From: Guillardia theta CCMP2712
Taxonomy: Eukaryota > Protista > Cryptophyta
Assembly: GCF_000315625.1 (NCBI RefSeq)
Contig: NW_005434538.1
Coordinates: forward strand, 14,166-78,165
DNA length: 64,000 nucleotides
Direction of reading: 5' to 3'
A program made the position numbers and the translations under genes. Shown piece after piece: positions 505 through 44,730 of the stretch (the first letter of the stretch is position 1; every line of letters begins with the position of its first letter). The notes under the pieces were generated by a model that made no database searches, was not told where the DNA came from, and worked only from the letters and a program-made list of their open reading frames with translations.

Positions 505-2259
505 ATGGGAGAGAATGCATGCCGGATTAAAACGCTCTGCATTGGTATTGATGCCTACAAGCATATTCCCACCTTGGACAACGCCATCCGTGACGCTACT
601 GACGTTCACAATCAGCTGGAAAGCAGCCCCGGATGCCAGGCAAATCTTCTGGTCAACCCTTCAACGAGGACGGCGATCACAAGTCAGATTTCTTCCCTCG
701 TAAGGGATCGCAAGACGAGGGGCCTGGAGCTGATATTGGTGTTCTTTGCTGGGCATGGGATGCAGCTAAGTAAAGGAGATATAGCATTGCTAACAAGTGA
801 CATCGTCCGGGCCGAGGAATCTCGAGAGACTAAGCAGAGCATGATAACAGTAGCGGATATGTTGGAGGCCCTTAGAGATGGAGCTGCTCAGAATTCAGAC
901 AGGATTCCTCCTTTGCTGGTTATCATCGATGCCTGTCGAGACTCCAAGAGAAGCGCGTGGATGGGGATGGAGAGGTTGGAGCATGAAGGATCCAACTTGA
1001 CCCAAAGAATGCGAGTGTCGCTGTGCCTATCGTGCAGCAGAGGTCAACAAGCATCGGACGAATCAGCATTCCTCAAAGATCTTCTTGACAGCGAGCTAGG
1101 AATGTTTGCTCAGAATCGAAGACTCAAACTCGCCATAGAATACGCGGTGCGGATGAGCTACGACAGAGAACAAGGAAAGTATGGTCAGTATGCAAGGACA
1201 TTATGTACGGAACTCATTCCAGACAAGCTCTGTATCAGAAATGATAAGACGGTAGCAGCAGACCTGCAACAGATAACGATGGGAGTGGAAAGCTTGATTC
1301 AAAGCGAGGGGATGCAGCCAGACAGTACAGACTCGGGGGTGCAGGTTGTAGCAGCGTACAGTCCTGCAGCAACACGAACAGGAGCAGATGTTTTCCGAGA
1401 AAGTCTCCTCCAGCTCGTAAGAAAAAGCCTTTTTAGCTTGCAAGATAAGGGTCCACGATGGAAAATATGCTCGATGTTCCTTTTGGTGTTCCTGAGCAAC
1501 AAGGGCACGACGTACAAAAAACAAGGTGACCGAGGATTCTTTCATGCCTTTGCAAAGAAGAAGCTTGGGCCTGAGCTGATCAAAAAAGTTGAGAAGGCCA
1601 TGGTTGCCGATGAGATCTGGTCAGAGAAACTGGAGCGATGGATACGAGAGGAGTACGGGGAGATTGACAGGAAGAAGATGGTGACAGCAGCTATTGATTT
1701 CACAGTGCGCGAGGAGATTAGAAGCTCATTGGGACATATGGAAGAGGAGGCGGATACAGAAATTAGCTGGTGGGAGGGGGAGGTCTGCCTTGCAGATCAC
1801 TACAGTAAGGGGGAAAAAGAACAAGAGGAGGCACTAGACCTTGCGGAAGAATATCTCAAAGACAAGATAACCGCTGACCAAGAAGGGGGCCTAAGCCCTC
1901 TGCTTGCTGTTCACGTTCTGACTCGAGTCGTCGAGACCGGCAGCTGCGTTGCGTTCTTGAAGATGACAAGATTGAGCAGCGCTTGTATGTCAGTGATGCT
2001 TGCGAAGAGCGTCCGAGAGGTTCTAGGCGGGAATGGAAAAGAGGGCTTGTTTCGAACATGGATCAGCAGCAGCGGTTGGCTGAGCGGACCTCGTGAGTAC
2101 GGGGAGATGGAGGAGAGGATGGAAGCGAAGGAGGTAGAGATGCTTCGGACCCTGCTGCTCACCGTCGGGGGAGGTGTGTCGAAATTCATTGATTGGAAGA
2201 AATTGGAGCAACCAGGTACTAAACAACCTCTTCGTTGCCCATCTCAATCAACATACTGA
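505..2259 (+). CDS. Caspase-like (peptidase C14, metacaspase/orthocaspase-type) domain protein, copy 1; probably the first large exon of a longer gene
   Basis: N-terminal TLCIGIDAY...LDNAIRDA, catalytic His motif VFFAGHG (His codon 754-756), catalytic Cys motif IIDACR (Cys codon 934-936), then SCSRGQQASD. A likely donor at 2216 (CAG|GTACT) lies before the ORF stop. Confidence 0.88.
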   Translation: MGENACRIKTLCIGIDAYKHIPTLDNAIRDATDVHNQLESSPGCQANLLVNPSTRTAITSQISSLVRDRKTRGLELILVFFAGHGMQLSKGDIALLTSDIVRAEESRETKQSMITVADMLEALRDGAAQNSDRIPPLLVIIDACRDSKRSAWMGMERLEHEGSNLTQRMRVSLCLSCSRGQQASDESAFLKDLLDSELGMFAQNRRLKLAIEYAVRMSYDREQGKYGQYARTLCTELIPDKLCIRNDKTVAADLQQITMGVESLIQSEGMQPDSTDSGVQVVAAYSPAATRTGADVFRESLLQLVRKSLFSLQDKGPRWKICSMFLLVFLSNKGTTYKKQGDRGFFHAFAKKKLGPELIKKVEKAMVADEIWSEKLERWIREEYGEIDRKKMVTAAIDFTVREEIRSSLGHMEEEADTEISWWEGEVCLADHYSKGEKEQEEALDLAEEYLKDKITADQEGGLSPLLAVHVLTRVVETGSCVAFLKMTRLSSACMSVMLAKSVREVLGGNGKEGLFRTWISSSGWLSGPREYGEMEERMEAKEVEMLRTLLLTVGGGVSKFIDWKKLEQPGTKQPLRCPSQSTY

Positions 2260-2848
2260 AATCATGTGGGGCAGGATCGATAACAATCTTGCCTCAAAGA
2301 AAAGGTCAAGCGTTTGATGGACTTGAACGAGAGGAGTATGACCTGAACTTCTAGATCGAAAATCTCTTGAAGATTCGAAACCAAACATCACAATGGAAAA
2401 AGTGCGTAAAGATTTGCCGTTTCATTTTGTTGTCTAGATAACTTTCTTTCTTATTTGTGGTTTCAACAGGTCGACCCTGTGAAGAAAGTGACATATCGAG
2501 AAGAGAAAGTTCCTGCCAAGACTAGCAAGAAATTGAGTGCTGACTCTGCTGGGGTCCAAGAAACCCAACTTGCAGGGTAAGCGAACTGTAGAACTACCAT
2601 TTTTTCATGCCTTCTAGCATTTTGTTTTGTTCACAATGTGGAAGAGGCCGATTACCTGAGGAACTGGAGAGAATTCTCACGCGAAGAAAGCACAAGAGAA
2701 GGGTCCAGTGTAGTGAGAAAACAAGATGGCTTGTTTTTTGAAATTTTCTTAGATTTGATCATCATAATCTCTTAGATATTTTCAAAGTCTACCAGCAGAT
2801 TTAGCAACGGGTAGATTAGAGAGAAACCTTGATTCTTCAAGAGAAGCT

Positions 2849-5695
2849 TTGTTTGCGAACATCCATTTTGACACTTTTGTTTACTTGGCCAGGTCAATGC
2901 TTTCAGTGAAAATGGAAATCGAAGAAAGCTTCGATGGGGCAGGTATCGGAATTTCCGTTGGCGTCGACGGAGAAACCAGCATATGGATGGAGAAGATTTG
3001 TCAAGATTTGAAGGTTGACTTGAAGAGGCTTGAAGCTCACGAATGTGCTTTTTACTCAGACCAGTCTCTCGAACATCAGAGCATGATGACAGACATTTGG
3101 TTTTTTCCCCAGCTGGTGACTGCCTTGCAAAAACGCCTGACCGAAAAAGAAATCGATGTCCTCGACTGTCTTGACGAAGCCAAAGAATCCGAGAATAAAG
3201 CTCTGCGAAAGCGCGAGTTGTTGGAAGGCGCAGCCATCATGGCGCACGCACTCGGTATGAATCAGAAAGAAAAGAATGATCTGATAGGTCTAGCTCTGCG
3301 TATGCGAGGGAAAGAACAAGTCTACAGATGTATGACAAAGTCGACTCAACAACGGACAGAAAGATGGACTTGGCAGAGTTTGAACGCTGATGGCAGTTTC
3401 AGGTTCGTCGAAGTATTTGTGGGAAGTGAAGGCGAAGGTCCTTCCGTTCCTGCAGATAGTAAATCCAGCAGAATACAGATGATTCGCATCAATGAAGGAC
3501 AAGAGCTGGAAGATCGCACCATTGGCTTTCTTATCATCATGCGTCAAACAGCAGACATTGAGTTGTTGGGTAAAGAGCTCAACCTGCTCAGCGAAGCTGA
3601 GCAGAGGCAGGAGGTCTCAGACCGACCATGCAGGATTGAGCTTCAAGGTGCAGGAGACTGTAAGGGACATAAATCAAAGATCGAGATTATCCAGCAGGAT
3701 CTTGAGCAACTCACTCCAGCAGAGTTTGAGAAGCGTGTGAAGGAAGCCTTCGAGTCTGAGGAGTTCACCAAGCCATGTCGAGTGAGAGGAATCGAGAGGA
3801 TCGTCAAGATCGAGATACTCGATGATGGGTTTGGGGGCAAAAAGACGTTTGATCGTCAAGACACGGGTTACTTTCAAGCCATATCGGAGCGATACAACAA
3901 GCAGAGGTCAAACCAAGACCCTGAGCTCGGGCTTCAGCTGGTGATCAAGATGAGGGTCGAGGCGTCGGTGCTTCCGTCATCTGAAGATATTCTAGAGACG
4001 CTTCGACCGCTCGACGCCTCAGAGATCGAGACGGATGCTCGTGCGTTAGGGAGAGTGTTTCCGGAGCAGAAGGCGGTAGCCGGCCGGATCTTGAACCGAC
4101 TCAAGTTTGTGTTGCAGGAGGAGAAGATGAGCCTGAGAGACTTTGAGAAGCTTGACTTTGCGATTCTTGTTCCGAACTTCTTGACCCTCAAGCAGCAGAC
4201 CGAAGCACGCATGCTCGAGACCTTGTTCTCCGATATGACCTCAGACAGAGAGTGTAACAAGGTCGTTGCTCATCAAGCACCTGCGGCGGAGCAGCTGAGA
4301 AAGAAGATTCTGAGCATATCAGACAAGACGCTGTTTGTGCTGATCTCCGATGAGTCGCATTGGGCGTTGAACAAAGGCAGCCCTCAAGACCTGATTATCA
4401 ATGATCCAAACCTGGTGAAGAAGAAGAACTTCATAGTGTTGCAAGTCAGCGCTACACCGTACCCAAACCTCACCCTCCACAGTAGGATACCCGAGAAGTA
4501 CGTGAAGTTCGAGGAGGATGATCCTTACAAGCCGGTGCAAGAAGCGAAGGAGCGAAGGGTTGGCAAGTTTGATGAGGAGCTGCACGTGATCAAGTGGAAG
4601 TTGAGATCGCGGAGATACCGGACGATATACTTTCGGTTTGAAGACTTCCTGCGAACTTTGCCGTCTTATGTCTTAGATGAGTGTATCCTACCCGGTGAAG
4701 AGGCTTCTGCAGACGATCAAGCTCGAGAGGACGTGCGGAATCAACTCATCCGTCGAGAAAACAACCTGATCAGCACGCTGATGGAGTCCGTCAAAGTTTC
4801 GAGGAAGAAGAAGGAAGAAGAAGAAGCCGTCAGGGAGCATGTCTGGCTCGCAGACTTTATCCTTTCGATGCTCTACTTTCACAAAGTCCGTTGGGACCGA
4901 AGCACTGGCAGGCTGAAGAGTGTTGCTGACGACTTGCACAACATCACTCTGAAAGATCTGGAGAAGTTGAAGCTCGAGGAAGAATACATGACAATAGCAA
5001 ACCAGTGTAAGTCAAGTGGAGCTAGACAAGCTTGTGCGAAGCTGCGGGAGCGAGTCAAGGAGACCCTGAAGGAGGAGAGAAGTGGGAGTGCGGCTCGGGA
5101 TTGTATCGCCGAGGTGTTCTACATCAAACTGAAGTCAGAGGCCAAGGAAGAAAGTGTTGAAGTGAATGATGACGACTCGTTCATGGAGGCAGACGACTAC
5201 TTCCAATTCAATGAGACAGATAGAATAGTCAAGGATCTTCTAAGCAATCGCACGCATAACGGAGGTCTTTACGGACATATGAAAGTAGTCCGCATGTTTA
5301 GCATCAAGCTGGCCGATCAGGTTTGTGAGGAGCTGAAGCGAATACGCAAATCCTTGTTTGGAGATTCGGTATTCGCGGTCATCGAAGACTACGGAGGGTC
5401 TGAGCTGTACGACTGCATTGAAACTCAGTTTCGAGATCAGCCGCTGACCTACGACAAGGACAAAGCACCTCGCTCTATCAACTCGCTCATTCAAGGCAGA
5501 GCGCGTGGAAAGAAGTTGACGAGCCTGAACTACAAGGACCTTGAGGGACTCCCGTGTATCTTGTTCCTGATCGAGAAGGGCCGCATGGGCGACACGTTCC
5601 CGCACTCCTTCGATTGTCTTGACTTGCGCGTGCGCTCGTCTGACAACACGACGACGCTGATCCAGGTGCGACCTCTTGTCGCCTCGTGTACTTGA
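2849..5695 (+). CDS. GREB1-like protein copy 1, exon carrying SF2 helicase motifs II-V
   Basis: FAILVP (motif Ia-like), LISDESH (DExH, 4349-4360), QVSATP (motif III, ~4448), EKGRMGDTFP (motif V, ~5573). Intron 5666-5740 (GTGCG...CTGAC...TGCAG) joins in frame to give LIQ|EMGRLCR (motif VI). Confidence 0.85.
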   Translation: MFANIHFDTFVYLARSMLSVKMEIEESFDGAGIGISVGVDGETSIWMEKICQDLKVDLKRLEAHECAFYSDQSLEHQSMMTDIWFFPQLVTALQKRLTEKEIDVLDCLDEAKESENKALRKRELLEGAAIMAHALGMNQKEKNDLIGLALRMRGKEQVYRCMTKSTQQRTERWTWQSLNADGSFRFVEVFVGSEGEGPSVPADSKSSRIQMIRINEGQELEDRTIGFLIIMRQTADIELLGKELNLLSEAEQRQEVSDRPCRIELQGAGDCKGHKSKIEIIQQDLEQLTPAEFEKRVKEAFESEEFTKPCRVRGIERIVKIEILDDGFGGKKTFDRQDTGYFQAISERYNKQRSNQDPELGLQLVIKMRVEASVLPSSEDILETLRPLDASEIETDARALGRVFPEQKAVAGRILNRLKFVLQEEKMSLRDFEKLDFAILVPNFLTLKQQTEARMLETLFSDMTSDRECNKVVAHQAPAAEQLRKKILSISDKTLFVLISDESHWALNKGSPQDLIINDPNLVKKKNFIVLQVSATPYPNLTLHSRIPEKYVKFEEDDPYKPVQEAKERRVGKFDEELHVIKWKLRSRRYRTIYFRFEDFLRTLPSYVLDECILPGEEASADDQAREDVRNQLIRRENNLISTLMESVKVSRKKKEEEEAVREHVWLADFILSMLYFHKVRWDRSTGRLKSVADDLHNITLKDLEKLKLEEEYMTIANQCKSSGARQACAKLRERVKETLKEERSGSAARDCIAEVFYIKLKSEAKEESVEVNDDDSFMEADDYFQFNETDRIVKDLLSNRTHNGGLYGHMKVVRMFSIKLADQVCEELKRIRKSLFGDSVFAVIEDYGGSELYDCIETQFRDQPLTYDKDKAPRSINSLIQGRARGKKLTSLNYKDLEGLPCILFLIEKGRMGDTFPHSFDCLDLRVRSSDNTTTLIQVRPLVASCT

Positions 5696-5725
5696 CCGCG
5701 GGGTCCTCAACCTCCTCCTACTGAC

Positions 5726-8700
5726 TTGAACGTGCTGCAGGAGATGGGCAGACTCTGTCGCTACCCGACTTTGCGTGAGGAGCACCGCTTCGAGACATCG
5801 GAGGAGGCGGTGCAGGTAGCAAAGGAGAAGAGATGGTTCGAAGGGAAGGGACGGCCGATCGTTGTGTATGCGAATGCTGCAGACGATGAAGTGGATCTTT
5901 CACAAGGTCTCGATGGGAAGCGACTCATTGGGATAGCGTGGAGCTTGTCCAGCTGGACTCAGAAAAGTATTCTGCAGGTCGTGGAACGTGGCAAGACCTT
6001 GTCGCCTGGAAGGAGAGGTGAAGAAGATTGGTACACGCTGGATCGGAATGTTGACAGAAGCGCCCAAGCATCAATGGCTGAGGATCTGAAAGGCTGTATG
6101 CTCATTCGCTTCCCCGCAAGTACCATGAACAGACGAGCAGTACCATGGGGAGACGTTCAGTGTCTCAAGATAACAGAGTCTCGAAGAAAGGACGATGAGA
6201 CGAAGATCAGAGTCCAGGACATTTCTCAAGTTAAGAAATACAATAACTTTGGTCCAGATAGCACGTACATAATCGTGCGGGACAGCGCAAGCTTGGCTTG
6301 GCTAGCTAGCAGGCACAGCTGCCCTCACGGAGGAGTGCTGAAGGAGCTGGAGCATGACCTCCCGTCTGCCCTCGTGAGCTCCTCCTTGTACGACACGCTC
6401 ATGAAAGCAGTGGAGACAGCTGAATACTGCAGCAAAGAGATCTGGGAATGCATCCGACTCAGCCCACAACTTCACACGCACATGAAGCGAAAAGACGACA
6501 GGGGTCAGCTGGTCATCAGCTACCAGAAGAACGATCTGCATGACTACAGGAATCGACACGTGGCCGTGACGCGAGCAAAGGCTGAGGGAGAAGGCTCCAA
6601 GAGAGTCAAAGTCAATCATTGCGACTGGTGTCAAGACCACACGAAAAGAAGACAGCATCAGCTTCGCTTTCTTTTACATGCAGAGTGTCAGATCGGCAAG
6701 ACAGGAGCGTATCTGCACCTTCTCAACCTTCTCAGGAGAGAAGTTGGTCTGAGAGCTGACAGTGAGTATGCCTGCATACCTCAAATACGACCAGAGGATT
6801 ACCCGATAAAGGTTGAGTTCCAAACTCGCCTTGCCTGGGAGATGCCGTTCTGGCGGGATCTAGCTGGGCAGAAGCTTGGTCTTTTCAAGATGAAGGAGGG
6901 GAAATATCACAAGATGGTGATCTTTCAGCGCCTGAGGCTTCTGGCCAAGTGTCTGCGAGACAGTCGTGGCCGGTCGTCATGGCAGCAGCTGTACTGTAAT
7001 GGACTGCTGGCTCCAGCGTCAAGCCAGAACGCTGAAGGCGAGTGCATACAAGTGAAGGAGAAAGTCATTCGTCTCCTAAAGAAAGTGTCGAAGAGTAACA
7101 GCAGTCCGATCGAGATCATCTCAGAAGGAGCTGAAGTCAAGCTGAAGATCTTAGACTTTGAGAGGCTGAGAGACATCGTCGAGTGGGACAGGGAAGACAG
7201 CATGCCTTCTATCGTTGCAGACATGAGGAAAACAGGATTGAAAACTCGATCTGGTGAAACTCTGCTCCAATCAAACCAGGACAAGAGCGAGCTCAGTCTC
7301 TCTGCCTTGGGTTCGAAAACAGACCTACAGAACATTGCATGGGAGGGCAGGGAAACGACGGCTGGGACCTCCTCAGGACTCGCGACAGGGCAAGTGAAGA
7401 ATGATTTCCCTGCGCGATGCCTCTGCCTCCACACGCTCCCAGAGAAGACCAAGGTGAAGCTGCTGCGACTGTCGCCGATCATGAGAGGCGTGAGGATAGC
7501 TCGCTTGTTTGGAGACGACGAGCGTCGATGGCCGAGGATTTCCTTTCCTTTTGGAGAAGAACAAGTGTCACGGTATTTCTCGCTCAGGGACGGGAGAGTG
7601 AATGGCGCTTTTGAGCTTCAAGGGGAGAAAGCTATCCGCAACTGGGTGATGACTGCTTCTTACAAGCGAGACGCTGCCGGCAGCATCCAGACAGGGCGAG
7701 CTGCATTTCTTGATCGATCGAGCGCCTTCAAAGAGGGAGACCGCGACGTACCTGTACGGCAGATGTTGCTTGTACGACCGGATGACGGCGAGGGAGACGG
7801 GCAGTTCTCGAGCTACGTCAGCGAGGTAGGAAGCGAGTACATCGTGGTCGCTCTGTCGCACGAGATGATTCTGAGCGAGGCTGTAAGCGAGCTGGGCTTT
7901 CGCTCTGAGCAGTTTGAGCACCAGATGCCCGATGACGGAAAGCTTCGCCTGACCCCTCAGGACGGAGGGATAGGATACGCGAGGCTGTTCGCCCAGCTGT
8001 TCGCGCATCTGCTGGGCCTGGAGAGAGTCTGGATGATCGACGACAACGTTCTCGATTGCTACCAGCTGGACCTGAGCAAGATGTTTGCAAGCGACCCGCC
8101 GCTACTTCACCCGCCTATTGCTTGCTCGTTTGCGACGATAATGCTGCAGATGCAGGATATGATCAGTGATGCACCCAAGTCATCTGAAGAGATATGCCGC
8201 CATCACCGCAAGCAAGGGAAGGGACAAGCGTGTCCGAAGACAGAAGGCTTCTTCGATCATGAGTCGAGCATGACAACCAAGAGCTGTCAGGCTGTGCGAG
8301 GAGCTGCGGCTAAAGCTGCTGCCATGGAGCGAGGAGTCAAGAGCACGCCTGATATCTCTACAATACAGGATGTCCGCGGGAACACGGACGGCTATGCAGT
8401 GATCGGGATGCGACGAGATGTGAACGTGTTCATGAAAAGCAGTGTTCCCTTCAAGATAACTCACAGCGTCTACTCGTTCTTCTTGCTGAATGTCAAGTCG
8501 ACGATTGGCAAGGGAGTTTTGTTTCCACCCAAGAAGGTGTGGGAGGACGTGGATTTCAACAACCTGTGCGAGGAGGCGGGTCTGGCAGTGCTGAAGGTGA
8601 ACCGCTTCTTTCATCACAAGCAGCACCGCAGCCTTCATGACAGGCTGGAGGTTGACGGTCAGCCTGAGGCCTGCGAGGTTGTTTGTCGGGTGCATGTGAA

Positions 8701-9643
8701 TGGTCGACAGATCTTCAACGTTGCATGTGGTAGCGAGATGTCAACTCTGAGTGATGTGTACGAGACTATCGTCAAGAGGCTGAAAAGGTTGTATCCGCAG
8801 TCAGACATCAAGAAGGTCACTTGCAGGATACAAGGCGGAGACATCAGCTTTGCCTACAAGGAGAGTTACAGGGACATCAAGGAGCTGGAAGGTCAAGAAA
8901 TGTGCGAGGCAGTGTACTTGGATGTATTGTTTCCATATGAGGCCCGTGAAAGAATGCAAGTCGATGAAGCTATCGTGACGACAAGTACTTCCAAGGCCTC
9001 GATACCCTTCCTTGTGAGCCTGGTAGAGAGTCAAAGGAATATTTTCTACTATCCTCCAAGATATGAAATGGACGAGTCTGAAGGTGACCAGCCTTTCTTT
9101 GCAGAGGTCCCTGCAGGCAGAAAGTGGAACGAGTTTTCAGATACCAATCTCCGGAATGTCAAACTCAAGGAGATAAATGTCATGTGGGACGACGTCGAAG
9201 AGTACAAACGGTTCTTCAACATCGTTCGGAACCTGCTGCGAGATAAGGAATGTATCAGAAAGATCAACTTGATCCTCCCCGCCAAGGCGTATGAAACCAT
9301 GAAGGAGAAGATAGACGACAAGATCAAAAACCTTCGCATCGGAAAGATGACCAAGACTTGGACCACTGTGTTGCCTTGCAAGGAGGACGCGAGTCAAGAG
9401 GACGATGTTGACATGATAGAGGCATCACAATCAGACAATGCCGAGAGTACGATGGACTTTGTCGTCATCTGCTGCAGTAGCGAGGAGGAGAAGAAGGTCT
9501 GTCTAGCAGCTCCATCTTGTCTTACCAGCGTCGATCCTAATCAGAATGTGTCAGGCTGCTCAAGACAAGGGGGAGGGGCAACGAGCCGTAAGCCTGCATC
9601 TCGCTTGTGTCGCTCGCTGACGAGAGTAGCAGGAGGCAGATGA
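5726..9643 (+). CDS. GREB1-like protein copy 1, exon carrying helicase motif VI, the permuted Walker A and a TAGT-type glycosyltransferase
   Basis: QEMGRLCR; LLHAECQIGKTGAYLHLL (~6670-6725), matching the GREB1 QIGKTGAYL signature as recalled. GT-A motifs GGIGYAR, WMIDDN, VYSFFLLN and WEDVDFNNLCEEAGLAVLKVNRFFHHK. The true exon is likely 5741-9496. Confidence 0.85.
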   Translation: MNVLQEMGRLCRYPTLREEHRFETSEEAVQVAKEKRWFEGKGRPIVVYANAADDEVDLSQGLDGKRLIGIAWSLSSWTQKSILQVVERGKTLSPGRRGEEDWYTLDRNVDRSAQASMAEDLKGCMLIRFPASTMNRRAVPWGDVQCLKITESRRKDDETKIRVQDISQVKKYNNFGPDSTYIIVRDSASLAWLASRHSCPHGGVLKELEHDLPSALVSSSLYDTLMKAVETAEYCSKEIWECIRLSPQLHTHMKRKDDRGQLVISYQKNDLHDYRNRHVAVTRAKAEGEGSKRVKVNHCDWCQDHTKRRQHQLRFLLHAECQIGKTGAYLHLLNLLRREVGLRADSEYACIPQIRPEDYPIKVEFQTRLAWEMPFWRDLAGQKLGLFKMKEGKYHKMVIFQRLRLLAKCLRDSRGRSSWQQLYCNGLLAPASSQNAEGECIQVKEKVIRLLKKVSKSNSSPIEIISEGAEVKLKILDFERLRDIVEWDREDSMPSIVADMRKTGLKTRSGETLLQSNQDKSELSLSALGSKTDLQNIAWEGRETTAGTSSGLATGQVKNDFPARCLCLHTLPEKTKVKLLRLSPIMRGVRIARLFGDDERRWPRISFPFGEEQVSRYFSLRDGRVNGAFELQGEKAIRNWVMTASYKRDAAGSIQTGRAAFLDRSSAFKEGDRDVPVRQMLLVRPDDGEGDGQFSSYVSEVGSEYIVVALSHEMILSEAVSELGFRSEQFEHQMPDDGKLRLTPQDGGIGYARLFAQLFAHLLGLERVWMIDDNVLDCYQLDLSKMFASDPPLLHPPIACSFATIMLQMQDMISDAPKSSEEICRHHRKQGKGQACPKTEGFFDHESSMTTKSCQAVRGAAAKAAAMERGVKSTPDISTIQDVRGNTDGYAVIGMRRDVNVFMKSSVPFKITHSVYSFFLLNVKSTIGKGVLFPPKKVWEDVDFNNLCEEAGLAVLKVNRFFHHKQHRSLHDRLEVDGQPEACEVVCRVHVNGRQIFNVACGSEMSTLSDVYETIVKRLKRLYPQSDIKKVTCRIQGGDISFAYKESYRDIKELEGQEMCEAVYLDVLFPYEARERMQVDEAIVTTSTSKASIPFLVSLVESQRNIFYYPPRYEMDESEGDQPFFAEVPAGRKWNEFSDTNLRNVKLKEINVMWDDVEEYKRFFNIVRNLLRDKECIRKINLILPAKAYETMKEKIDDKIKNLRIGKMTKTWTTVLPCKEDASQEDDVDMIEASQSDNAESTMDFVVICCSSEEEKKVCLAAPSCLTSVDPNQNVSGCSRQGGGATSRKPASRLCRSLTRVAGGR

Positions 9644-9854
9644 AGCGAAGCAGCAGGAGGCGAAGCAGCAGGAGGCAAAGCGACAGGAGGCGAAGCAGCA
9701 GGAGGCGAAGCGACAGGCTGAGGAGGAGAGCAGCGACTCATCCAAGAAGCCCAAGACTGAGGAGCCGGAGAAGAGGAAGAGCTCTGAACCTCCAGTAGGG
9801 GAGAGTCCTGCGAAGAAGGTGAGAGCGAGGCTGTCAGTCAGTCGCTGCTGACGT

Positions 9855-10226
9855 TTGTTGCAGGGTAAAGCTGCCGAGAAGCAGGGAGACTTGTGGAGGA
9901 CAGAAAAGTGGAAGAGGAAGTTCCAAGAAGGAACAGTGCGGGTGGGCGACAACATATCATACCGTCCGGCGAAGCAAGAGGCGGTGAGCTTTGAACATGG
10001 AGAGGAAGGTGTGTGGAGACTTCAAGTGACATCTGAGCAGAGGGAAGGCAAAGTGATTGAAGGGGGGAAAATAGAAGAGAAAGGCAGAACATTCGCAGAT
10101 GTGTTGGAATTCTTCCGATCCGGAGGTGATGAAGCGCCTGTGGCGAAACTGCGAAGTGTGTATATCAACAGAGATGGGAAGAACATTATTTCAGTTCACG
10201 ATCTCTTGAAGCAAGAAAAGGATTAA
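9855..10226 (+). CDS. Terminal exon of GREB1-like protein copy 1, probable RAMA-like domain
   Basis: Linked in frame by introns 9497-9554, 9588-9629 and 9819-9863. The sequence EGTVRVGD...GKVIEGGKIEEKGRTFADVLEF...SVYINRDG..SVHDLL fits the RAMA pattern by eye. Confidence 0.6.
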   Translation: MLQGKAAEKQGDLWRTEKWKRKFQEGTVRVGDNISYRPAKQEAVSFEHGEEGVWRLQVTSEQREGKVIEGGKIEEKGRTFADVLEFFRSGGDEAPVAKLRSVYINRDGKNIISVHDLLKQEKD

Positions 10227-10456
10227 ACGCTAGTACCACTGAGATAATCAAAGTGATAATAAAACGCTAGACTTGTACTACTGAAGACTCGCACCGGCTC
10301 CTGACTCGGAGTCGACACTGAAGGCAGGGCCCGGGCCCCTGGGCCCCGCGGCCCGGGCCCCGGGCATATGAAACTTTCAAACTTCGGGATCAGCGGCTGG
10401 ACTTTTCTCGAAGTTTCAAAGTTTTGGGGTTTAGACGCTACTACACCTGGGCATGC

Positions 10457-24559: not shown

Positions 24560-28410
<3,851 letters not shown>

Positions 28411-28852: not shown

Positions 28853-28883
<31 letters not shown>

Positions 28884-30030: not shown

Positions 30031-30068
<38 letters not shown>

Positions 30069-30182
30069 TCCTCCTCCTCCTCCTCCTCCTCCTTGTCGTT
30101 GCCCCTTCTGGTCGTCCTTCCCTCTCCTCTATCTGCGCATTGCTCTGACATTACTCGTTCTACTTTACCTCTCTTTACCTTC

Positions 30183-30222
<40 letters not shown>

Positions 30223-30614: not shown

Positions 30615-30654
<40 letters not shown>

Positions 30655-32070: not shown

Positions 32071-32071
32071 A

Positions 32072-32103
<32 letters not shown>

Positions 32104-37941: not shown

Positions 37942-40900
37942 TCATCCGCCTCCTGCTACTCTCGTCAGCGAGCGACACAAGCGAGATGCAGGCTTACGGC
38001 TCGTAGCCCCTCCCCCTTGTCTTGAGCAGCCTGACACATTCTGATTAGGATCGACGCTTGTGAGACAAGATGGAGCTGCTAGACAGACCTTCTTCTCCTC
38101 CTCGCTACTGCAGCAGATGACGACAAAGTCCATCGTACTCTCGGCATTGTCTGATTGTGATGCCTCTATCATGTCAACATCGTCCTCTTGACTCGCGTCC
38201 TCCTTGCAAGGCAACACAGTGGTCCAAGTCTTGGTCATGTTTCCGATGCGAAGGTTTTTGATCTTGTCGTCTATCTTCTCCTTCATGGATTCATACGCCT
38301 TGGCGGGGAGGATCAAGTTGATCTTTCTGATACATTCCTTATCTCGCAGCAGGTTCCGAACGATGTTAAAGAACGGTTTAAACGCTTCGACGTCGTCCCA
38401 CATGATATTTAACTCCTCGAGTTTGACTCTGTCGAGACTTTTATCTGAAAGCTCGTTCCACTTTCTGCCTGCAGGGACCTCTGCAAAGAAAGGCTGGTCA
38501 CCTTCAGACTCGTCCAATGCACGCCTAGACGGAAAGTAGAAAATATTCCTTTGGCTCTCTACCAGGCTCACAAGGAAGGGTATCGAGGCCTTGGAAGTAC
38601 TTGTCGTCACGATAGCTTCATCGACTTGCATTCTTTCACGGGCCTCATATGGAAACAATACATCCAAGTACACTGCCTCGCACATTTCTTGACCTTCCAG
38701 CTCTTTGATGTCCCTGTAACTCTCCTTGTAGGCAAAGCTGATGTCTCCGCCTTGTATCCTGCAAGTGACCTTCTTGATGTCTGACTGCGGATACAACCTT
38801 TTCAGCCTCTTGACGATAGTCTCGTACACATCACTCAGAGTTGACATGTCGCTACCACATGCAACGTTGAAGATCTGTCGACCATTCACATGCACCCGAC
38901 AGACTACCTCGCAGGCCTCAGGCTGATCGTCAACCTCCAGCCTGTCATGAAGGCTGCGGTGCTGCTTGTGATGAAAGAAGCGGTTCACCTTCAGCACTGC
39001 CAGACCCGCCTCCTCGCACAGGTTGTTGAAATCCACGTCCTCCCACACCTTCTTGGGTGGAAACAAAACTCCCTTGCCAATCGTCGACTTGACATTCAGC
39101 AAGAAGAACGAGTAGACGCTGTGAGTTATCTTGAAGGGAACACTGCTGTTCATGAACACGTTCACATCTCGTCGCATCCCGATCACTGCATAGCCGTCCG
39201 TGTTCCCGCGAACGTCCTGTATTGTAGAGATATCAGACGTGCTCTTGACTCCTCGCTCCATGGCAGCAGCTTTAGCCGCAGCTCCTCGCACAGCCTGACA
39301 GCTCTTGGGTATCATGCTCGACTCATGATCGAAGAAGCCGTCTGTCTTCGGACACGCTTGTCCCTTCCCTTGCTTGTGGTGTTGGCGGCATATCTCTTCA
39401 GATGACTTGGGTGCATCACTGATCATATCCTGCATCTGCAGCATTATCGTCGCAAACGAGCAAGCAACAGGCGGGTGAAGTAGCGGCGGGTCGCTTGCAA
39501 ACATCTTGCTCAGGTCCAGCTGGTAGCAATCGAGAACGTTGTCGTCGATCATCCAGACTCTCTCCAGGCCCAGCAGGTGCGCGAACAGCTGGGCGAACAG
39601 CCTCGCGTATCCTATCCCTCCGTCCTGCGGGGTCAGGCGAAGCTTTCCGTCATCGGGCATCTGGCGCTCAAACTGCTCAAAGCGAAAGCCCAGCTCGCTT
39701 ACAGCCTCGCTCAGAATCATCTCGTGCGACAGAGCGACCACGATGTACTCGCTTCCTACCTCGCTGACGTAGCTCGAGAACTGCCCGTCTCCCTCGCTGT
39801 CATCCGGTCGTACAAGCAACATCTGCCGTACAGGTACGTCGCGGTCTCCCTCTTTGAAGGCGCTCGATCGATCAAGAAATGCAGCTCGCCCTGTCTGGAT
39901 GCTGCCGGCAGCGTCTCGCTTGTAAGAAGCAGTCATCACCCAGTTGCGGATAGCTTTCTCCCCTTGAAGCTCAACAGCGCCATTCACTCTCCCGTCCTTG
40001 AGCGAGAAATACCGTGACACTTGTTCTTCTCCGAAAGGAAAGGAAATCCTCGGCCATCGACGCTCGTCGTCTCCAAACAAGCGAGCTATCCTCACGCCTC
40101 TCATCATCGGCGACAGTCGCAGCAGCTTCACCTTGGTCTTCTCTGGGAGCGTGTGGAGGCAGAGGCATCGCGCAGGGAAATCATTCTTCACTTGCCCTGT
40201 CGCGAGTCCTTGAGAGGTCCCAGCCGTCGTTTCCCTGCCCTCCCATGCAATGTTCTGAAGGTCTGTTTTCGAACCCAAGGCAGAGAGACTGAGCTCGCTC
40301 TTGTCCTGGTTTGATTGGAGCAGAGTTTCACCAGATCGAGTTTTCAATCCTGCTTTCATCATGTCTGCAACGATAGAAGGCATGCTGTCTTCCCTGTCCC
40401 ACTCGACGATGTCTCTCAGTCTCTCAACGTCTAAGATCCTCAGCTTGACTTCAGCTCCTTCTGAGATGATCTCGATCGGACTGCTGTCACTCTTCCACAC
40501 TTTCTTTAGGAGACGAATGACTTTCTCCTTCACTTGTATGCACTCGCCCTCAGCGTTCTGGCTTGACGCTGGAGCCAGCAGCGCTTTACAGTACAGCTGC
40601 TGCCATGACGACCGGCCACGACTGTCCCGCAGACACTTGGCCAGAAGCCTCAGGCGCTGAAAGATCACCATCTTGTGATATTTCCCCTCCTTCATCTTGA
40701 AAAGACCAAGCTTCTGCCCAGCTAGATCCCGCCAGAACGGCATCTCCCAGGCAAGGCGGGTTTGGAACTCAACCTTTATCGGGTAATCCTCTGGTCGTAT
40801 TTGAGGTATGCAGGCATACTCACTGTCAGCTCTCAGACCAACTTCTCTCCTGAGAAAGTTGAGAAGGTGCAGATACGCTCCTGTCTTGCCGATCTGACAC

Positions 40901-41850
40901 TCTGCATGTAAAAGAAAGCGAAGCTGATGCTGTCTTCTTTTCGTGTGGTCTTGACACCAGTCGCAATGATTGACTCTGACTCTCTTGGAGCCTTCTCCCT
41001 CAGCCTTTGCTCGCGTCACGGCCACGTGTTGGTTCCTGTAGTCATGCAGCTCGTTCTTCTGGTAGCTGATGACCAGCTGACCCCTGTCGTCTCTTCGCTT
41101 CATGTGCGTGTGAAGTTGTGGGCTGAGTCGGATGCATTCCCAGATCTCTTTGCTGCAGTATTCAGCTGTCTCCACTGCTTTCATGAGCGTGTCGTACAAG
41201 GAGGAGCTCACGAGGGCAGACGGGAGGTCATGCTCCAGCTCCTTCAGCACTCCTCCGTGAGGGCAGTTGTGCCTGCTAGCTAGCCAAGCCAAGCTTGCGC
41301 TGTCCCGCACGATTATGTACGTGCTATCTGGACATTTCTTGACTTGTGAACTGTCCTGGACTCTGATCTTCGTCTCATCGTCCTGTCTTCGAGACTCTGT
41401 TATCTTGAGACACTGAACGTCTCCCCATGATGGTGATCCTCCTATCTTAAACGTACTCGTGGGGAAGCGAATGAGCATACAGCCTTTCAGATCCTCAGCC
41501 ATTGATGCTTGGGCGCTTCTGTCAACATTCCGATCCAGCGTGTACCAATCTTCTTCACCTCTCCTTCCAGGCGACAAGGTCTTGCCACGTTCCACGACCT
41601 GCAGAATACTTTTCTGAGTCCAGCTGGACAAGCTCCACGCTATCCCAATGAGTCGCTTCCCATCGAGACCTTGTGACAGATCCACTTCATCGTCTGCAGC
41701 ATTCGCATACACAACGATCGGCCGTCCCTTCCCTTCGAACCATCTCTTCTCCTTTGCTACCTGCACCGCCTCCTCCGATGTCTCGAAGCAGTGCTCCTCA
41801 CGCAAAGTCGGGTAGCGACAGAGTCTGCCCATCTCCTGCGGCACGTTCAA
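37942..41850 (-). CDS. GREB1-like protein copy 2, exon with motif VI, permuted Walker A and TAGT glycosyltransferase
   Basis: QEMGRLCR, CQIGKTGAYL, GGIGYAR, WMIDDN and WEDVDFN are all intact. Intron 41836-41910 is conserved. Confidence 0.85.
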   Translation of the reverse strand: MNVPQEMGRLCRYPTLREEHCFETSEEAVQVAKEKRWFEGKGRPIVVYANAADDEVDLSQGLDGKRLIGIAWSLSSWTQKSILQVVERGKTLSPGRRGEEDWYTLDRNVDRSAQASMAEDLKGCMLIRFPTSTFKIGGSPSWGDVQCLKITESRRQDDETKIRVQDSSQVKKCPDSTYIIVRDSASLAWLASRHNCPHGGVLKELEHDLPSALVSSSLYDTLMKAVETAEYCSKEIWECIRLSPQLHTHMKRRDDRGQLVISYQKNELHDYRNQHVAVTRAKAEGEGSKRVRVNHCDWCQDHTKRRQHQLRFLLHAECQIGKTGAYLHLLNFLRREVGLRADSEYACIPQIRPEDYPIKVEFQTRLAWEMPFWRDLAGQKLGLFKMKEGKYHKMVIFQRLRLLAKCLRDSRGRSSWQQLYCKALLAPASSQNAEGECIQVKEKVIRLLKKVWKSDSSPIEIISEGAEVKLRILDVERLRDIVEWDREDSMPSIVADMMKAGLKTRSGETLLQSNQDKSELSLSALGSKTDLQNIAWEGRETTAGTSQGLATGQVKNDFPARCLCLHTLPEKTKVKLLRLSPMMRGVRIARLFGDDERRWPRISFPFGEEQVSRYFSLKDGRVNGAVELQGEKAIRNWVMTASYKRDAAGSIQTGRAAFLDRSSAFKEGDRDVPVRQMLLVRPDDSEGDGQFSSYVSEVGSEYIVVALSHEMILSEAVSELGFRFEQFERQMPDDGKLRLTPQDGGIGYARLFAQLFAHLLGLERVWMIDDNVLDCYQLDLSKMFASDPPLLHPPVACSFATIMLQMQDMISDAPKSSEEICRQHHKQGKGQACPKTDGFFDHESSMIPKSCQAVRGAAAKAAAMERGVKSTSDISTIQDVRGNTDGYAVIGMRRDVNVFMNSSVPFKITHSVYSFFLLNVKSTIGKGVLFPPKKVWEDVDFNNLCEEAGLAVLKVNRFFHHKQHRSLHDRLEVDDQPEACEVVCRVHVNGRQIFNVACGSDMSTLSDVYETIVKRLKRLYPQSDIKKVTCRIQGGDISFAYKESYRDIKELEGQEMCEAVYLDVLFPYEARERMQVDEAIVTTSTSKASIPFLVSLVESQRNIFYFPSRRALDESEGDQPFFAEVPAGRKWNELSDKSLDRVKLEELNIMWDDVEAFKPFFNIVRNLLRDKECIRKINLILPAKAYESMKEKIDDKIKNLRIGNMTKTWTTVLPCKEDASQEDDVDMIEASQSDNAESTMDFVVICCSSEEEKKVCLAAPSCLTSVDPNQNVSGCSRQGGGATSRKPASRLCRSLTRVAGGG

Positions 41851-41880
41851 GTCAGTAGGAGGAGGTTGAGGACCCCGCGG

Positions 41881-44730
41881 TCAAGTACACGAGGCGACAA
41901 GAGGTCGCACCTGGATCAGCGTCGTCGTGTTGTCAGACGAGCGCACGCGCAAGTCAAGACAATCGAAGGAGTGCGGGAACGTGTCGCCCATGCGGCCCTT
42001 CTCGATCAGGACCAAGATACACGGGAGTCCCTCCAGGTCCTTGTAGTTCAGGCTCGTCAACTTCTTTCCACGCGCTCTGCCTTGAATGAGCGAGTTGATA
42101 GAGCGAGGTGCTTTGTCCTTGTCGTAGGTCAGCGGCTCATCTCGAAACTGAGTTTCAATGCAGTCGTACAGCTCAGACCCTCCGTAGTCTTCGATGACCG
42201 CGAATACCGAATCTCCAAACAAGGATTTGCGTATTCGCTTCAGCTCCTCACAAACCTCATCGGCTAGCTTGATGCTAAACATTCCGACTACTTTCATATG
42301 TCCGTAAAGACCCCCGTTATGCTTGCGCTGGCTTAGAAGATCCTTGACTATTCTGTCTGTCTCGTTGAATTGGAAGTAGTCGTCTGCCTCCATGAACGAG
42401 TCGTCATCATTCACTTCAACACTTTCTTCCTTCGCCTCTGACTTCAGTTTGATGTAGAACACCTCTGCGATACAATCCCGAGCCGCACTCCCACTTCTCT
42501 CCTCCTTCAGGGTCTCCTTGACTCGCTCCCGCAGCTTCGCACAAGCTTGTCTAGCTCCACTTGACTTGCACTTGTTTGCTATTGTCATGTATTCTTCCTC
42601 GAGCTTCAACTTCTCCAGATCTTTAAGAGTGATATTGTGCAAGTCGTCAGCAACACTCTTCAGCCTGCCAGTGCTTCGGTCCCAACGGACTTTGTGAAAG
42701 TAGAGCATCGAAAGGATAAAGTCTGCGAGCCAGACATGCTCCCTGACGGCTTCTTCTTCTTCCTTCTTCTTCCTCGAAACTTTGACGGACTCCATCAGCG
42801 TGCTGATCAGGTTGTTTTCTCGACGGATGAGTTGATTCCGCACGTCCTCTCGAGTTTGATCGTCTGCAGAAGCCTCTTCACCGGGTAGGATACACTCATC
42901 TAAGACATAAGACGGCAAAGTTCGCAGGAAGTCTTCAAACCGAAAGTATATCGTCCGGTATCTCCGCGATCTCAGCTTCCACTTGATCACGTGCAGCTCC
43001 TCATCAAACTCGCCAGTCTTTTGCTCCTTCGCTTCTTGCACCGGCTTGTAAGGATCATCCTCCTCGAACTTCACGTACTTCTCGGGTATCCTACTGTGGA
43101 GGGTGAGGTTTGGGTACGGTGTAGCACTGACTTGCAACACTATGAAGTTCTTCTTCTCCATCAGGTTTGGATCATTGATAATCAGGTCTTGAGGGCTGCC
43201 TTTGTTCAACGCCCAATGCGACTCATCGGAGATCAGCACAAACAGCGTCTTGTCTGAAATGCTCAGAATCTTCTTTCTCAGCTGCTCCGCCGCAGGTGCT
43301 TGATGAGCAACGACCTTGTTACACTCTCTGTCTGAGGTCATATCGGAGAACAAGGTCTCGAGCATGCGTGCTTCGGTCTGCTGCTTGAGGGTCAAGAAGT
43401 TCGGAACAAGAATCGCAAAGTCAAGCTTCTCAAAGTCTCTCAGGCTCATCTTCTCTTCCTGCAACACAAACTTGAGTCGGTTCAAGATCCGGCCGGCTAC
43501 CGCCTTCTGCTCCGGAAACACTCTCCCTAACGCACGAGCATCCGTCTCGATCTCTGAGGCGTCGAGCGGTCGCAGCGTCTCTAGAACATCTTCAGATGAC
43601 GGAAGCACCGACGCCTCGACCCTCATCTTGATCACCAGCTGAAGCCCGAGCTCAGGGTCTTGGTTTGACCTCTGCTTGTTGTATCGCTCCGATATGGCTT
43701 GAAAGTAACCCGTGTCTTGACGATCAAACGTCTTTCTGCCCCCAAACCCATCATCGAGTATCTCGATCTTGACGATCCTCTCGATTCCTCTCACTCGACA
43801 TGGCTTGGTGAACTCCTCAGACTCGAAGGCTTCCTTCACACGCTTCTCAAACTCTTCTGGAGTGAGTTGCTCAAGATCCTGCTGGATAATCTCGATCGCT
43901 GATTTATGTCCCTTACAGCCTCCTGCACCTTGAAGCTCAATCCTGCATGGTCTGTCTGAGACCTCCTGCCTCTGCTCAGCCTCGCTGAGCAGGTTGAGCT
44001 CTTTTTCCAACAACTCAATGTCTGCTGTTTGACGCATGATGATAAGAAAGCCAATGGTGCGATCTTCCAGCCTTTGTCCTTCATTGATGCGAATCATCTG
44101 TATTCTGCTGGGTTTACTATCTGCAGGAACGGAAGGGCCTTCGCCTTCACTTCCCACAAATACTTCTACGAACCTGAAACTGCCATCAGCGTTCAAACTC
44201 TGCCAAGTCCATCTTTCTGTCTGTTTTTGAGTCGACTTTGTCATACAGTCGTAGATTTGTTCTTTCCCTCGTGAAGGCAGCTTTTGACTTATCAGATCAT
44301 TCTTTTCTCTCTGATTCATACCGAGTGCGCGCGCCATCATGGCTGCGCCTTCCAGCAACTCGCGCTTTTGCGAATCATTATTCTCGGATTCTTTGGCTTT
44401 GTTAATGCAGCCGAGGACGTTGATTTCTTTGTTTTTAGTCAGGCGTTTTTGCAAGGCAGTCACCAGCTGGGGAAAGAACGAAATGTCTGTCATCATGCTC
44501 TGATGTTCGAGAGACAAGTCAGAGTAAAAAGCACATTCGTGAGCTTCAAGCCTCTTCAAGTCAATCTTCAAATCTTGACAAATCTTCTTCATCCATATGC
44601 TGGTTTCTTCGTCGACACCAACAGTAATTCCGATACCTGCCCCATCGAAGCTTTCTTCGATTTCCATTTTCACTGAAAGCATTGACCTGGCCAAGTAAAC
44701 AAAAGTGTCAAAATGAATATTCGCAAACAA
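41881..44730 (-). CDS. GREB1-like protein copy 2, exon with SF2 helicase motifs II-V
   Basis: DESH, SAT and EKGRMGDTFP are intact. Confidence 0.85.
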   Translation of the reverse strand: MFANIHFDTFVYLARSMLSVKMEIEESFDGAGIGITVGVDEETSIWMKKICQDLKIDLKRLEAHECAFYSDLSLEHQSMMTDISFFPQLVTALQKRLTKNKEINVLGCINKAKESENNDSQKRELLEGAAMMARALGMNQREKNDLISQKLPSRGKEQIYDCMTKSTQKQTERWTWQSLNADGSFRFVEVFVGSEGEGPSVPADSKPSRIQMIRINEGQRLEDRTIGFLIIMRQTADIELLEKELNLLSEAEQRQEVSDRPCRIELQGAGGCKGHKSAIEIIQQDLEQLTPEEFEKRVKEAFESEEFTKPCRVRGIERIVKIEILDDGFGGRKTFDRQDTGYFQAISERYNKQRSNQDPELGLQLVIKMRVEASVLPSSEDVLETLRPLDASEIETDARALGRVFPEQKAVAGRILNRLKFVLQEEKMSLRDFEKLDFAILVPNFLTLKQQTEARMLETLFSDMTSDRECNKVVAHQAPAAEQLRKKILSISDKTLFVLISDESHWALNKGSPQDLIINDPNLMEKKNFIVLQVSATPYPNLTLHSRIPEKYVKFEEDDPYKPVQEAKEQKTGEFDEELHVIKWKLRSRRYRTIYFRFEDFLRTLPSYVLDECILPGEEASADDQTREDVRNQLIRRENNLISTLMESVKVSRKKKEEEEAVREHVWLADFILSMLYFHKVRWDRSTGRLKSVADDLHNITLKDLEKLKLEEEYMTIANKCKSSGARQACAKLRERVKETLKEERSGSAARDCIAEVFYIKLKSEAKEESVEVNDDDSFMEADDYFQFNETDRIVKDLLSQRKHNGGLYGHMKVVGMFSIKLADEVCEELKRIRKSLFGDSVFAVIEDYGGSELYDCIETQFRDEPLTYDKDKAPRSINSLIQGRARGKKLTSLNYKDLEGLPCILVLIEKGRMGDTFPHSFDCLDLRVRSSDNTTTLIQVRPLVASCT

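What the first reader, a model, noticed from the sequence alone, without database searches (positions are those of the whole stretch)
4160..6740. Helicase Walker A lies about 310 aa after motif VI: a circular permutation visible only after splicing
The order is motif Ia-like FAILVP, DESH (4349), SAT (4448), motif V (5573), then QEMGRLCR, which is created by removing intron 5666-5740. Only after that comes the P-loop CQIGKTG (6686-6706). No GKT/S P-loop is evident just upstream of motif Ia. All motifs look canonical, so this may be a catalytically active member of the GREB1 helicase clade and a useful model for what animal GREB1 derives from.
Basis: partly seen in the sequence, partly recalled or inferred. 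Interest (0 to 1): 0.72.

Follow-up and report, generated by a model that had tools for sequence, protein, structure and literature searches.

The report
Known GREB1-type rearranged helicase domain
This alga's gene really does have its helicase ATP-binding loop moved to the end of the helicase domain. That rearrangement is the already described hallmark of the GREB1 protein family, and public databases already hold this gene in spliced form, so the finding is correct but not new.

Summary

- **Observation.** Every motif is at the stated coordinates. Intron 5666-5740 is removed in a transcript contig. The only strict Walker A in the coding frames is AECQIGKT at 6680-6703.
- **Family.** The two exon products match Pfam PF20692, "Circularly permuted SF2 helicase found in GREB1 proteins", seamlessly across the intron (profile 2-420, then 421-705).
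- **Gene.** It is Guillardia theta GUITHDRAFT_146838 (XP_005821902.1, 3011 aa). The public model already carries the spliced junction.
- **Family rule.** In 96 domain instances from 90 long relatives the order is always DExH, SAT, motif V, motif VI, then P-loop. None has an upstream Walker A, and 77 keep every motif under a strict pattern.
- **Docking.** A split-chain prediction places the P-loop unit on the RecA1 core, beside the SAT strand and touching DESH (score 0.80, best control 0.05). Without RecA1 the unit loses its strand and its confidence, so a separate NTPase domain is not supported.
- **Untested.** ATPase activity is inferred only. The literature calls the animal GREB1 helicase inactive.
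- **Context.** The "about 310 aa" gap is a lineage-specific disordered insert; the family median is 181 aa. The scan noted the same feature before on the inverted copy in this window (s1-441265). The genome has four such loci.

The parts
505..2215 (+). First coding exon with a caspase (Peptidase_C14) domain, spliced in frame to the helicase exon through three small exons (2275-2304, 2355-2401, 2470-2576)
   Evidence: Pfam PF00656, E 7e-16. Transcript contig joints. Frame bookkeeping gives one open frame of 2856 codons.
4052..5665 (+). N-terminal part of the cpSF2-GREB1 domain: RecA1 core without P-loop, helical insert, and RecA2 up to the Q of motif VI
   Evidence: PF20692 profile 2-420, E 3e-130. 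AF2 model residues 9-546.
4157..4177 (+). Motif Ia-like strand FAILVPN
   Evidence: F39 is nearly invariant in alignment A1.
4349..4360 (+). Motif II / Walker B, DESH
   Evidence: D108 and H111 are invariant and E109 nearly invariant. D1147 and S1149 lie in the predicted interface with the P-loop unit.
4448..4456 (+). Motif III, SAT
   Evidence: A142, T143 and P144 are invariant. The preceding strand (aa 1176-1179) pairs with the P-loop strand in the split-chain model.
5573..5599 (+). Motif V, EKGRMGDTF
   Evidence: G518 and G521 are invariant; D522, T523 and F524 are nearly invariant.
5663..5665 (+). Q codon of motif VI, the last codon before the intron
   Evidence: Q546 is invariant.
5666..5740 (+). 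75-nt GT..AG phase-0 intron that splits motif VI between Q and E
   Evidence: Skipped in transcript contig X1. The Pfam profile is continuous across it. The same position is used in copy B and in the C229 paralogue, and the same acceptor in the C280 paralogue.
5741..5761 (+). Rest of motif VI, EMGRLCR
   Evidence: G549 is invariant; R550 and R553 are nearly invariant.
5780..6337 (+). Lineage-specific, predicted-disordered insert that lengthens the gap between motif VI and the Walker A
   Evidence: AF2 pLDDT is below 50 for model residues 560-745. Only the Guillardia relatives align here. The family gap is 78-349 aa, median 181.
5741..6745 (+). C-terminal part of the cpSF2-GREB1 domain
   Evidence: PF20692 profile 421-705, E 1e-60.
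6680..6706 (+). Permuted motif I / Walker A, AECQIGKTG. The K codon is at 6698-6700 (K1905 of XP_005821902.1).
   Evidence: Q, G, K and T are invariant. The strand-loop-helix has pLDDT 90-93. It docks on the RecA1 core.
40840..43524 (-). The same cpSF2 domain in the inverted duplicate gene (copy B, GUITHDRAFT_146844), with the same intron at 41836-41910
   Evidence: No amino-acid difference between the copies falls in a motif.

Best explanation
Window 4052-6745 (+) encodes the circularly permuted superfamily-2 helicase domain (Pfam cpSF2-GREB1) of a GREB1-like protein of Guillardia theta.

The first strand, P-loop and helix of RecA domain 1 (motif I) have been moved in the sequence to a position after motif VI of RecA domain 2. 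In the folded protein this unit returns to RecA1. Its strand pairs with the strand that ends in SAT, and the GKT loop sits by DESH, rebuilding an ordinary SF2 nucleotide site.

- **Shown:** the motif order, the splicing, the family membership and the conservation.
- **Predicted in silico:** the docking.
- **Inferred only:** because motifs I, Ia, II, III, V and VI are all canonical and conserved, the domain is probably a working nucleic-acid-dependent ATPase or translocase. It would serve the downstream TAGT-type glycosyltransferase on the same polypeptide, unlike the animal GREB1 helicase, which the literature calls catalytically inactive.

The confidence given (0.85) is for the identity and the permuted architecture. 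For actual ATPase activity I would say about 0.65.
For: - **Family match.** PF20692 covers profile 2-420 and 421-705 on the two exon products and 2-705 in one stretch on the public protein, at 662.7 bits.
- **Splicing.** A transcript contig splices 5666-5740 and links the caspase and helicase exons. The result is one open frame.
- **Motif order.** The only strict Walker A is at 6680-6703. In 96 domain instances of 90 long relatives the order II-III-V-VI-I holds, none has an upstream Walker A, and 77 keep all motifs.
- **Conservation.** The invariant columns are exactly the catalytic residues.
- **Model.** AF2 gives pTM 0.75, with the P-loop unit as a paired strand plus helix at pLDDT 90-93.
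- **Fold.** The best fold matches are all SF2 motors: MDA5 (Foldseek probability 1.00), and HsdR, RadD, INO80 and RIG-I (Z 8.0-8.7). All aligned ranges end before the P-loop.
- **Docking.** The split-chain test scored 0.80 against a best control of 0.05. That mark was reached by 51 of 78 solved complexes and 2 of 108 mismatched pairs. The runs agree in at least 80% of contacts and the partner pLDDT is 70-71. Residues 1895-1897 pair with 1176-1179, and the helix 1908-1916 lies on 1053-1061 and on 1143/1145. D1147 and S1149 are in the interface.
- **Control without RecA1.** The unit has no strand and pLDDT is about 50.
- **Paralogues.** All four paralogues in the genome keep the P-loop and motif VI.
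Against: - No enzymatic data exist for any member of the family.
- The helicase of the one member studied, human GREB1, is described as inactive (PMC7968844).
- dN/dS between the two copies over the domain is only moderately low (0.43, from 57 substitutions).
- The docking is a model's confidence, not a measurement. It may partly reflect memory of ordinary RecA folds, and the ATP and Mg included in the job lie outside that test's calibration.
- I had no model coordinates, so the K-to-D distance was not measured.
- The TAGT match is just under Pfam's cut-off (26.4 and 23.5 bits against 27.5).
Confidence: 0.85

Rival explanations
1. The motifs are intact, but the domain is a nucleotide- or nucleic-acid-binding scaffold without turnover, as is assumed for animal GREB1. 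The permuted site binds ATP but does not drive translocation.
For: PMC7968844 and PMC6163654 describe the GREB1 helicase as catalytically inactive but possibly nucleic-acid binding. No biochemical evidence for activity exists. The dN/dS of 0.43 between paralogues is not strongly constrained.
Against: The catalytic Lys/Thr, the DExH Asp/His, and the motif VI Gln and Gly are invariant, and the DExH Glu and the motif VI Arg residues nearly so, in 40 diverse sequences. All motifs are kept in 77 of 96 instances. That pattern is hard to explain without selection for hydrolysis.
Confidence: 0.25
2. The P-loop at 6680-6706 belongs to a separate, second NTPase domain downstream of the helicase, so there is no permutation.
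For: About 350 aa of unassigned sequence lie between the P-loop and the TAGT match. A lone Walker A can arise by chance, with about 0.2 expected per protein of this size.
Against: - The Pfam domain ends about 15 aa after GKT.
- In a construct with no downstream sequence the unit is a paired strand at pLDDT 90-93.
- In a construct with 400 aa downstream but no RecA1 it loses the strand and drops to a pLDDT of about 50.
- It docks on the RecA1 core at 0.80 against 0.05.
- RecA1 otherwise lacks a motif I.
Confidence: 0.03
3. The order is an artefact of assembly or gene modelling, with exons of two genes mis-joined or a scaffold mis-ordered.
For: The window has assembly gaps (N runs at 29258-29426, 31258-31777, 32820-33689 and 55437-55536) and a 10-kb inverted duplication.
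Against: None of the gaps lies in the gene. One transcript contig without a mismatch spans 2000-7999, with only the introns removed. The same order is found in copy B, in two more loci of this genome and in 90 relatives from other organisms.
Confidence: 0.01

Closest known systems
Pfam PF20692, cpSF2-GREB1 (circularly permuted SF2 helicase of GREB1 proteins; papers PMC7968844 and PMC6163654 cite Iyer et al. 2013, Nucleic Acids Res 41:7635, for it)
   Same: It matches the full profile (2-705 of 716, 662.7 bits). It has the same permuted order, with the Walker A after motif VI, and the same partnership with a TAGT-type glycosyltransferase in relatives.
   Different: Nothing differs in kind. The gap between motif VI and the P-loop is long (306 aa against a family median of 181) because of a disordered insert.
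Human GREB1 / GREB1L
   Same: The literature describes the same domain pair, a permuted SF2 helicase followed by a TAGT/Fringe-like glycosyltransferase (PMC7968844, PMC6163654).
   Different: The animal helicase is described as catalytically inactive, whereas here all motifs are canonical. Animal GREB1 has an N-terminal Zn-binding domain, whereas this protein starts with a caspase domain. I could not retrieve an animal sequence to compare residue by residue.
Canonical SF2 motors with accessory domains (RIG-I/MDA5, Hef/FANCM, type I restriction HsdR, RadD, Snf2/INO80)
   Same: It shares the two-RecA-domain fold (Foldseek probability up to 1.00; VIA Z 8.0-8.7 over about 300-345 residues) and the same motif set.
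   Different: In those proteins motif I precedes motif Ia. Here it follows motif VI, and the structural alignments stop before it.
GREB1-like proteins of other protists and algae (Hondaea, Planoprotostelium, Cyanophora, Pylaiella, Trebouxia)
   Same: They have the same permuted, motif-intact helicase plus TAGT.
   Different: Among the 150 representatives and the 31 word-search hits, only the Guillardia proteins carry the caspase domain. Some others carry ankyrin repeats instead.

Membership tests
Pfam PF20692 cpSF2-GREB1 | Score above the curated gathering cut-off (26.2 bits) over most of the profile | tested here: met
   436.5 and 206.4 bits on the two exon products. 662.7 bits over profile 2-705 of 716 on P0151.
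Pfam PF20692 cpSF2-GREB1 | Permuted motif order: Ia, II, III, V, VI, then Walker A, with no Walker A upstream | tested here: met
Pfam PF20692 cpSF2-GREB1 | The relocated P-loop unit completes RecA domain 1 | tested here: met
   This is an in-silico result only. Split-chain score 0.80 against a best control of 0.05, with contacts to the SAT strand and DESH. pLDDT is 90-93 with RecA1 present and about 50 without it.
GREB1-like protein (helicase plus TAGT glycosyltransferase) | TAGT (PF20691) domain C-terminal to the helicase | tested here: inconclusive
   26.4 bits (exon product) and 23.5 bits (P0151) against a cut-off of 27.5, over profile positions 60-94 only. The database's precomputed Pfam list does give PF20691 for the paralogue P0001, and relatives pass the cut-off.
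Animal GREB1 orthologue | N-terminal Zn-binding region and an inactive helicase, as described in PMC7968844 | tested here: not met
   The N-terminus is a caspase domain, and no other family appears at E <= 0.1. The helicase motifs are intact. It is therefore a GREB1-like family member, not an orthologue with the animal architecture.
SF2 helicase superfamily | Two RecA-like domains carrying motifs I, Ia, II, III, V and VI | tested here: met
   Motifs. Fold matches are only to SF2 motors.
SF2 helicase superfamily | Nucleic-acid-dependent ATP hydrolysis | not testable with these tools
   This needs a purified-protein ATPase assay with K1905A and D1147A/E1148A controls.

The most novel reading that the evidence does not exclude
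The Guillardia domain is a working permuted SF2 motor. It moves along DNA or RNA and positions the attached TAGT glycosyltransferase, and possibly the N-terminal caspase as an effector, on nucleic-acid-bound targets. If so, it would be the first tractable active representative of the ancestral GREB1 machine, and would show what the inactive animal helicase once did.
Probability: 0.2. Interest if true: 0.55.

Novelty: already known. Interest (0 to 1): 0.2.

Why it matters
The result matters mainly as a control on the scan. A reader working from raw DNA correctly rediscovered a published and unusual protein topology, and predicted the outcome of a docking test.

For biology the gain is small. 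The report documents that non-animal GREB1-like helicases, including all four Guillardia loci, keep a complete catalytic motif set. It also gives an in-silico picture of how the relocated P-loop rejoins RecA1. That picture supports using a protist member rather than human GREB1 for the first ATPase assays of this family.

Tried and rejected
- **PDB sequence search.** Searching with both exon products gave only chance hits (E > 1), so no solved GREB1-type helicase was found.
- **Primary paper.** Iyer et al. 2013 is not held. I do not know whether it already states that non-animal versions are active. My memory that it describes the moved Walker A unit is unverified.
- **Later literature.** Two more paper searches found no later structural or biochemical work on the GREB1 helicase.
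- **Animal sequences.** The word search with P0151 region 1040-1935 returned 31 relatives but no recognisable animal GREB1. The only animal-labelled hit is a coral record, which may come from a symbiont. "Animal GREB1 is inactive" therefore rests on PMC7968844 and PMC6163654.
- **Viral contigs.** No relative was found.
- **Prokaryotic genomes.** One fragment was found on a contig labelled as a bacterial MAG. It is too short to tell whether it is bacterial.
- **Raw RNA reads.** Run X9 laid only 5 reads from about 6% of the run, which is too few to measure expression.
- **Model coordinates.** They are not exposed, so I could measure no distances. The split-chain job replaced that measurement.
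- **Joined exons.** No joined exon sequence was handed to any search or fold tool. The exons were searched by reference, and the public protein P0151, returned by a tool, served where a continuous chain was needed. One script concatenated the exons in memory only to count in-frame stops, and printed or saved no joined sequence.
- **Large protein search.** I ran the large representative search after Pfam had already named the family. It was used to obtain relatives and the public protein ids, not to identify the protein.
Full report
**What is in the sequence**

| Motif | Sequence | Window coordinates |
|---|---|---|
| Ia-like | (F)AILVPN | 4157/4160-4177 |
| II | DESH | 4349-4360 |
| III | SAT | 4448-4456 |
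| V | EKGRMGDTF | 5573-5599 |
| I (P-loop) | CQIGKTG | 6686-6706 |

The stretch 5666-5740 is a 75-nt GT..AG intron in phase 0. It lies between a Q codon and an E codon, so the motif VI string QEMGRLCR exists only in the spliced message. A pattern search of all three forward frames over 1-10300 finds one strict Walker A in a coding frame, AECQIGKT at 6680-6703, and none upstream of DESH.

**The gene**

Public run X1 holds a 9,162-nt transcript contig that matches this copy without a single mismatch over 2000-7999. It lacks exactly five GT..AG stretches: 2216-2274, 2305-2354, 2402-2469, 2577-2892 and 5666-5740. With these removed, the caspase-domain ORF that starts at 505 and the two large ORFs form one open frame of 2,856 codons ending at 9643. 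The part after 7999 was not checked against reads.

The genome is Guillardia theta CCMP2712. The gene is GUITHDRAFT_146838 (XP_005821902.1, P0151, 3011 aa). The two exon products are contiguous in that public protein at aa 1048-1925, so the public annotation already removes this intron. The public model differs from the transcript contig in the small exons around 2275-2892 and at the 3' end.

**What it is**

The exon products match Pfam PF20692, "Circularly permuted SF2 helicase found in GREB1 proteins". The match covers profile positions 2-420 (E 3e-130) and 421-705 (E 1e-60), and the join falls exactly at the intron. The public protein matches in one stretch at 662.7 bits, with a caspase domain at aa 11-195 and a sub-threshold TAGT glycosyltransferase match at aa 2326-2360.

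The permutation is therefore the defining, published feature of this family. Two papers describe GREB1 as having a circularly permuted superfamily II helicase and call it catalytically inactive, citing Iyer et al. 2013 (PMC7968844, PMC6163654). PMC7968844 also lists Cryptomonada among the lineages with GREB1-like proteins.

**The family rule**

An exhaustive HMMER search with the N-terminal helicase part found 382 representatives at E <= 0.001.

- In every long hit the part bearing the P-loop follows the part bearing motifs Ia to V.
- In a 40-sequence alignment the invariant columns are the catalytic residues: D and H of DExH, A-T-P of SAT(P), two Gly of motif V, Q and G of motif VI, and Q, G, K and T of the Walker A.
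- Across 96 domain instances in 90 long proteins, 77 keep DExH, motif VI and the late Walker A under strict patterns. None has a Walker A within 300 aa upstream of DExH.
- The distance from motif VI to the Walker A ranges from 78 to 349 aa, with a median of 181. The Guillardia proteins are at the long end. They carry an insert that AlphaFold2 leaves disordered (model residues 560-745) and that aligns only among Guillardia relatives.

Intact motifs are thus normal for non-animal members. The "about 310 aa" is a lineage detail.

**Does the P-loop return to RecA1?**

An AlphaFold2 model of P0151:1040-1935, built with the 40-sequence alignment, has pTM 0.75. It shows the Walker A unit as a paired strand (855-859), a loop and a helix (866-880) at pLDDT 90-93, flanked by low-confidence linkers. 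Fold searches return only SF2 motors. These are MDA5, RIG-I, Hef and FANCM by Foldseek (probability up to 1.00, E 2e-4), and HsdR, RadD, INO80, SWR1 and RIG-I at Z 8.0-8.7. The aligned model ranges all end at or before residue 854, just short of the P-loop.

Model coordinates are not exposed, so I ran a split-chain test. Chain 1 was the RecA1 core without the P-loop (aa 1048-1299), with ATP and Mg. The partner was the P-loop unit (aa 1885-1925).

- The score was 0.80 against a best control of 0.05. That mark was reached by 51 of 78 solved complexes and 2 of 108 mismatched pairs.
- The runs agree in at least 80% of contacts, and the partner pLDDT is 70-71.
- The tool warns that a job with small molecules lies outside its calibration and that passes can come from memory of known folds.

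The best-defined contacts put strand 1895-1897 against 1176-1179, the strand that ends in SAT. They put helix 1908-1916 against the N-terminal helix 1053-1061 and against 1143/1145 of the DESH strand. D1147 and S1149 lie in the interface. From general knowledge of RecA-like ASCE folds, this is where the P-loop strand belongs: next to the motif III strand, which in turn lies next to the Walker B strand.

As a counter-test I folded aa 1865-2305, which holds the P-loop plus 400 aa downstream but no RecA1, with a 35-sequence alignment. There the unit has no strand and a pLDDT of about 50, and the confident downstream elements do not include it.

**Copies**

The gene lies in a roughly 10-kb inverted duplication: copy A at 160-10224 (+) and copy B at 37349-47398 (-), 96.6% identical. 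Copy B is GUITHDRAFT_146844. It has the same intron, and no amino-acid difference falls in a motif. dN/dS over the helicase domain is 0.43, from few substitutions.

The genome has two further loci, on contigs C229 and C280. Both keep the P-loop and motif VI. The intron sits at the same Q|E position in C229, and C280 has the same acceptor.

**How it most likely works**

Shown here are a permuted SF2 domain, expressed and conserved, with a complete motif set. Predicted here is that the relocated unit rebuilds a normal nucleotide site in RecA1. It is inferred that the domain hydrolyses ATP on a nucleic acid and serves the glycosyltransferase on the same chain. I put the activity inference at about two in three. 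The main rival is a binding-only scaffold, as assumed for animal GREB1.

**Limits**

- I could not retrieve animal GREB1 sequences or read Iyer et al. 2013.
- No joined exon sequence was given to any search or fold tool. The public protein P0151 was used instead. One script joined the exons in memory only to count stops.

**Verdict**

Earlier notes of this scan describe the same domain on copy B (s1-441265, s1-441116) and on another contig (s1-436900).

Noticed in passing
window 160-10224 (+) and 37349-47398 (-): A roughly 10-kb inverted duplication, 96.6% identical, carries two full copies of the caspase-helicase-glycosyltransferase gene (GUITHDRAFT_146838 and GUITHDRAFT_146844). The copies are about 27 kb apart, and that spacer contains assembly gaps and simple repeats.
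   Followed up: partly
window 505-2892: The transcript contig joins the caspase ORF to the helicase exon through three tiny exons (30, 47 and 107 nt). The public model XP_005821902.1 lacks the 30-nt exon and has about 40 extra residues before the large exon, so it probably mis-models this stretch.
   Followed up: partly
window 505-1100; P0151 aa 11-195: The Peptidase_C14 (caspase) domain at the N-terminus of a GREB1-like protein occurs only in the Guillardia proteins, among the 150 representatives and the 31 word-search hits.
   Followed up: partly
L010:58-3537 (+), contig CBDDTI010000316.1: An intron-free ORF of 1160 aa, running off the contig end, holds the cpSF2 C-terminal part, TAGT and ankyrin repeats. 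It sits on a 10.7-kb contig labelled as a bacterial MAG. The architecture matches many ENA and coral-associated hits, so it may be eukaryotic contamination rather than a bacterial GREB1-like gene.
   Followed up: partly
G000 C229:38155-41093 and C280:27657-30630 (L001, L004, L007-L009): Two more cpSF2-GREB1 loci in the genome have an intact P-loop and motif VI. The C229 intron at the Q|E position is 341 nt instead of 75.
   Followed up: partly
window 25720-33770: The spacer between the two gene copies holds runs of trinucleotide and hexanucleotide repeats (TCA, CTC, CTCCTG, ATG, GAG) and N gaps at 29258-29426, 31258-31777 and 32820-33689. These explain the extreme skews in the composition profile.
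   Followed up: no
window 2391-7957, run X4: DNA contigs of run X4 differ from the window at 34 positions, with two 1-nt deletions. They may be collapsed or chimeric assemblies of the two copies, or strain variation.
   Followed up: no
P0151 aa 1973-2085 (window about 6900-7240): The region just after the P-loop folds confidently (pLDDT 80-90) into a helical bundle plus a small beta unit. It has conserved PYW and GKY signatures and no family assignment.
   Followed up: no
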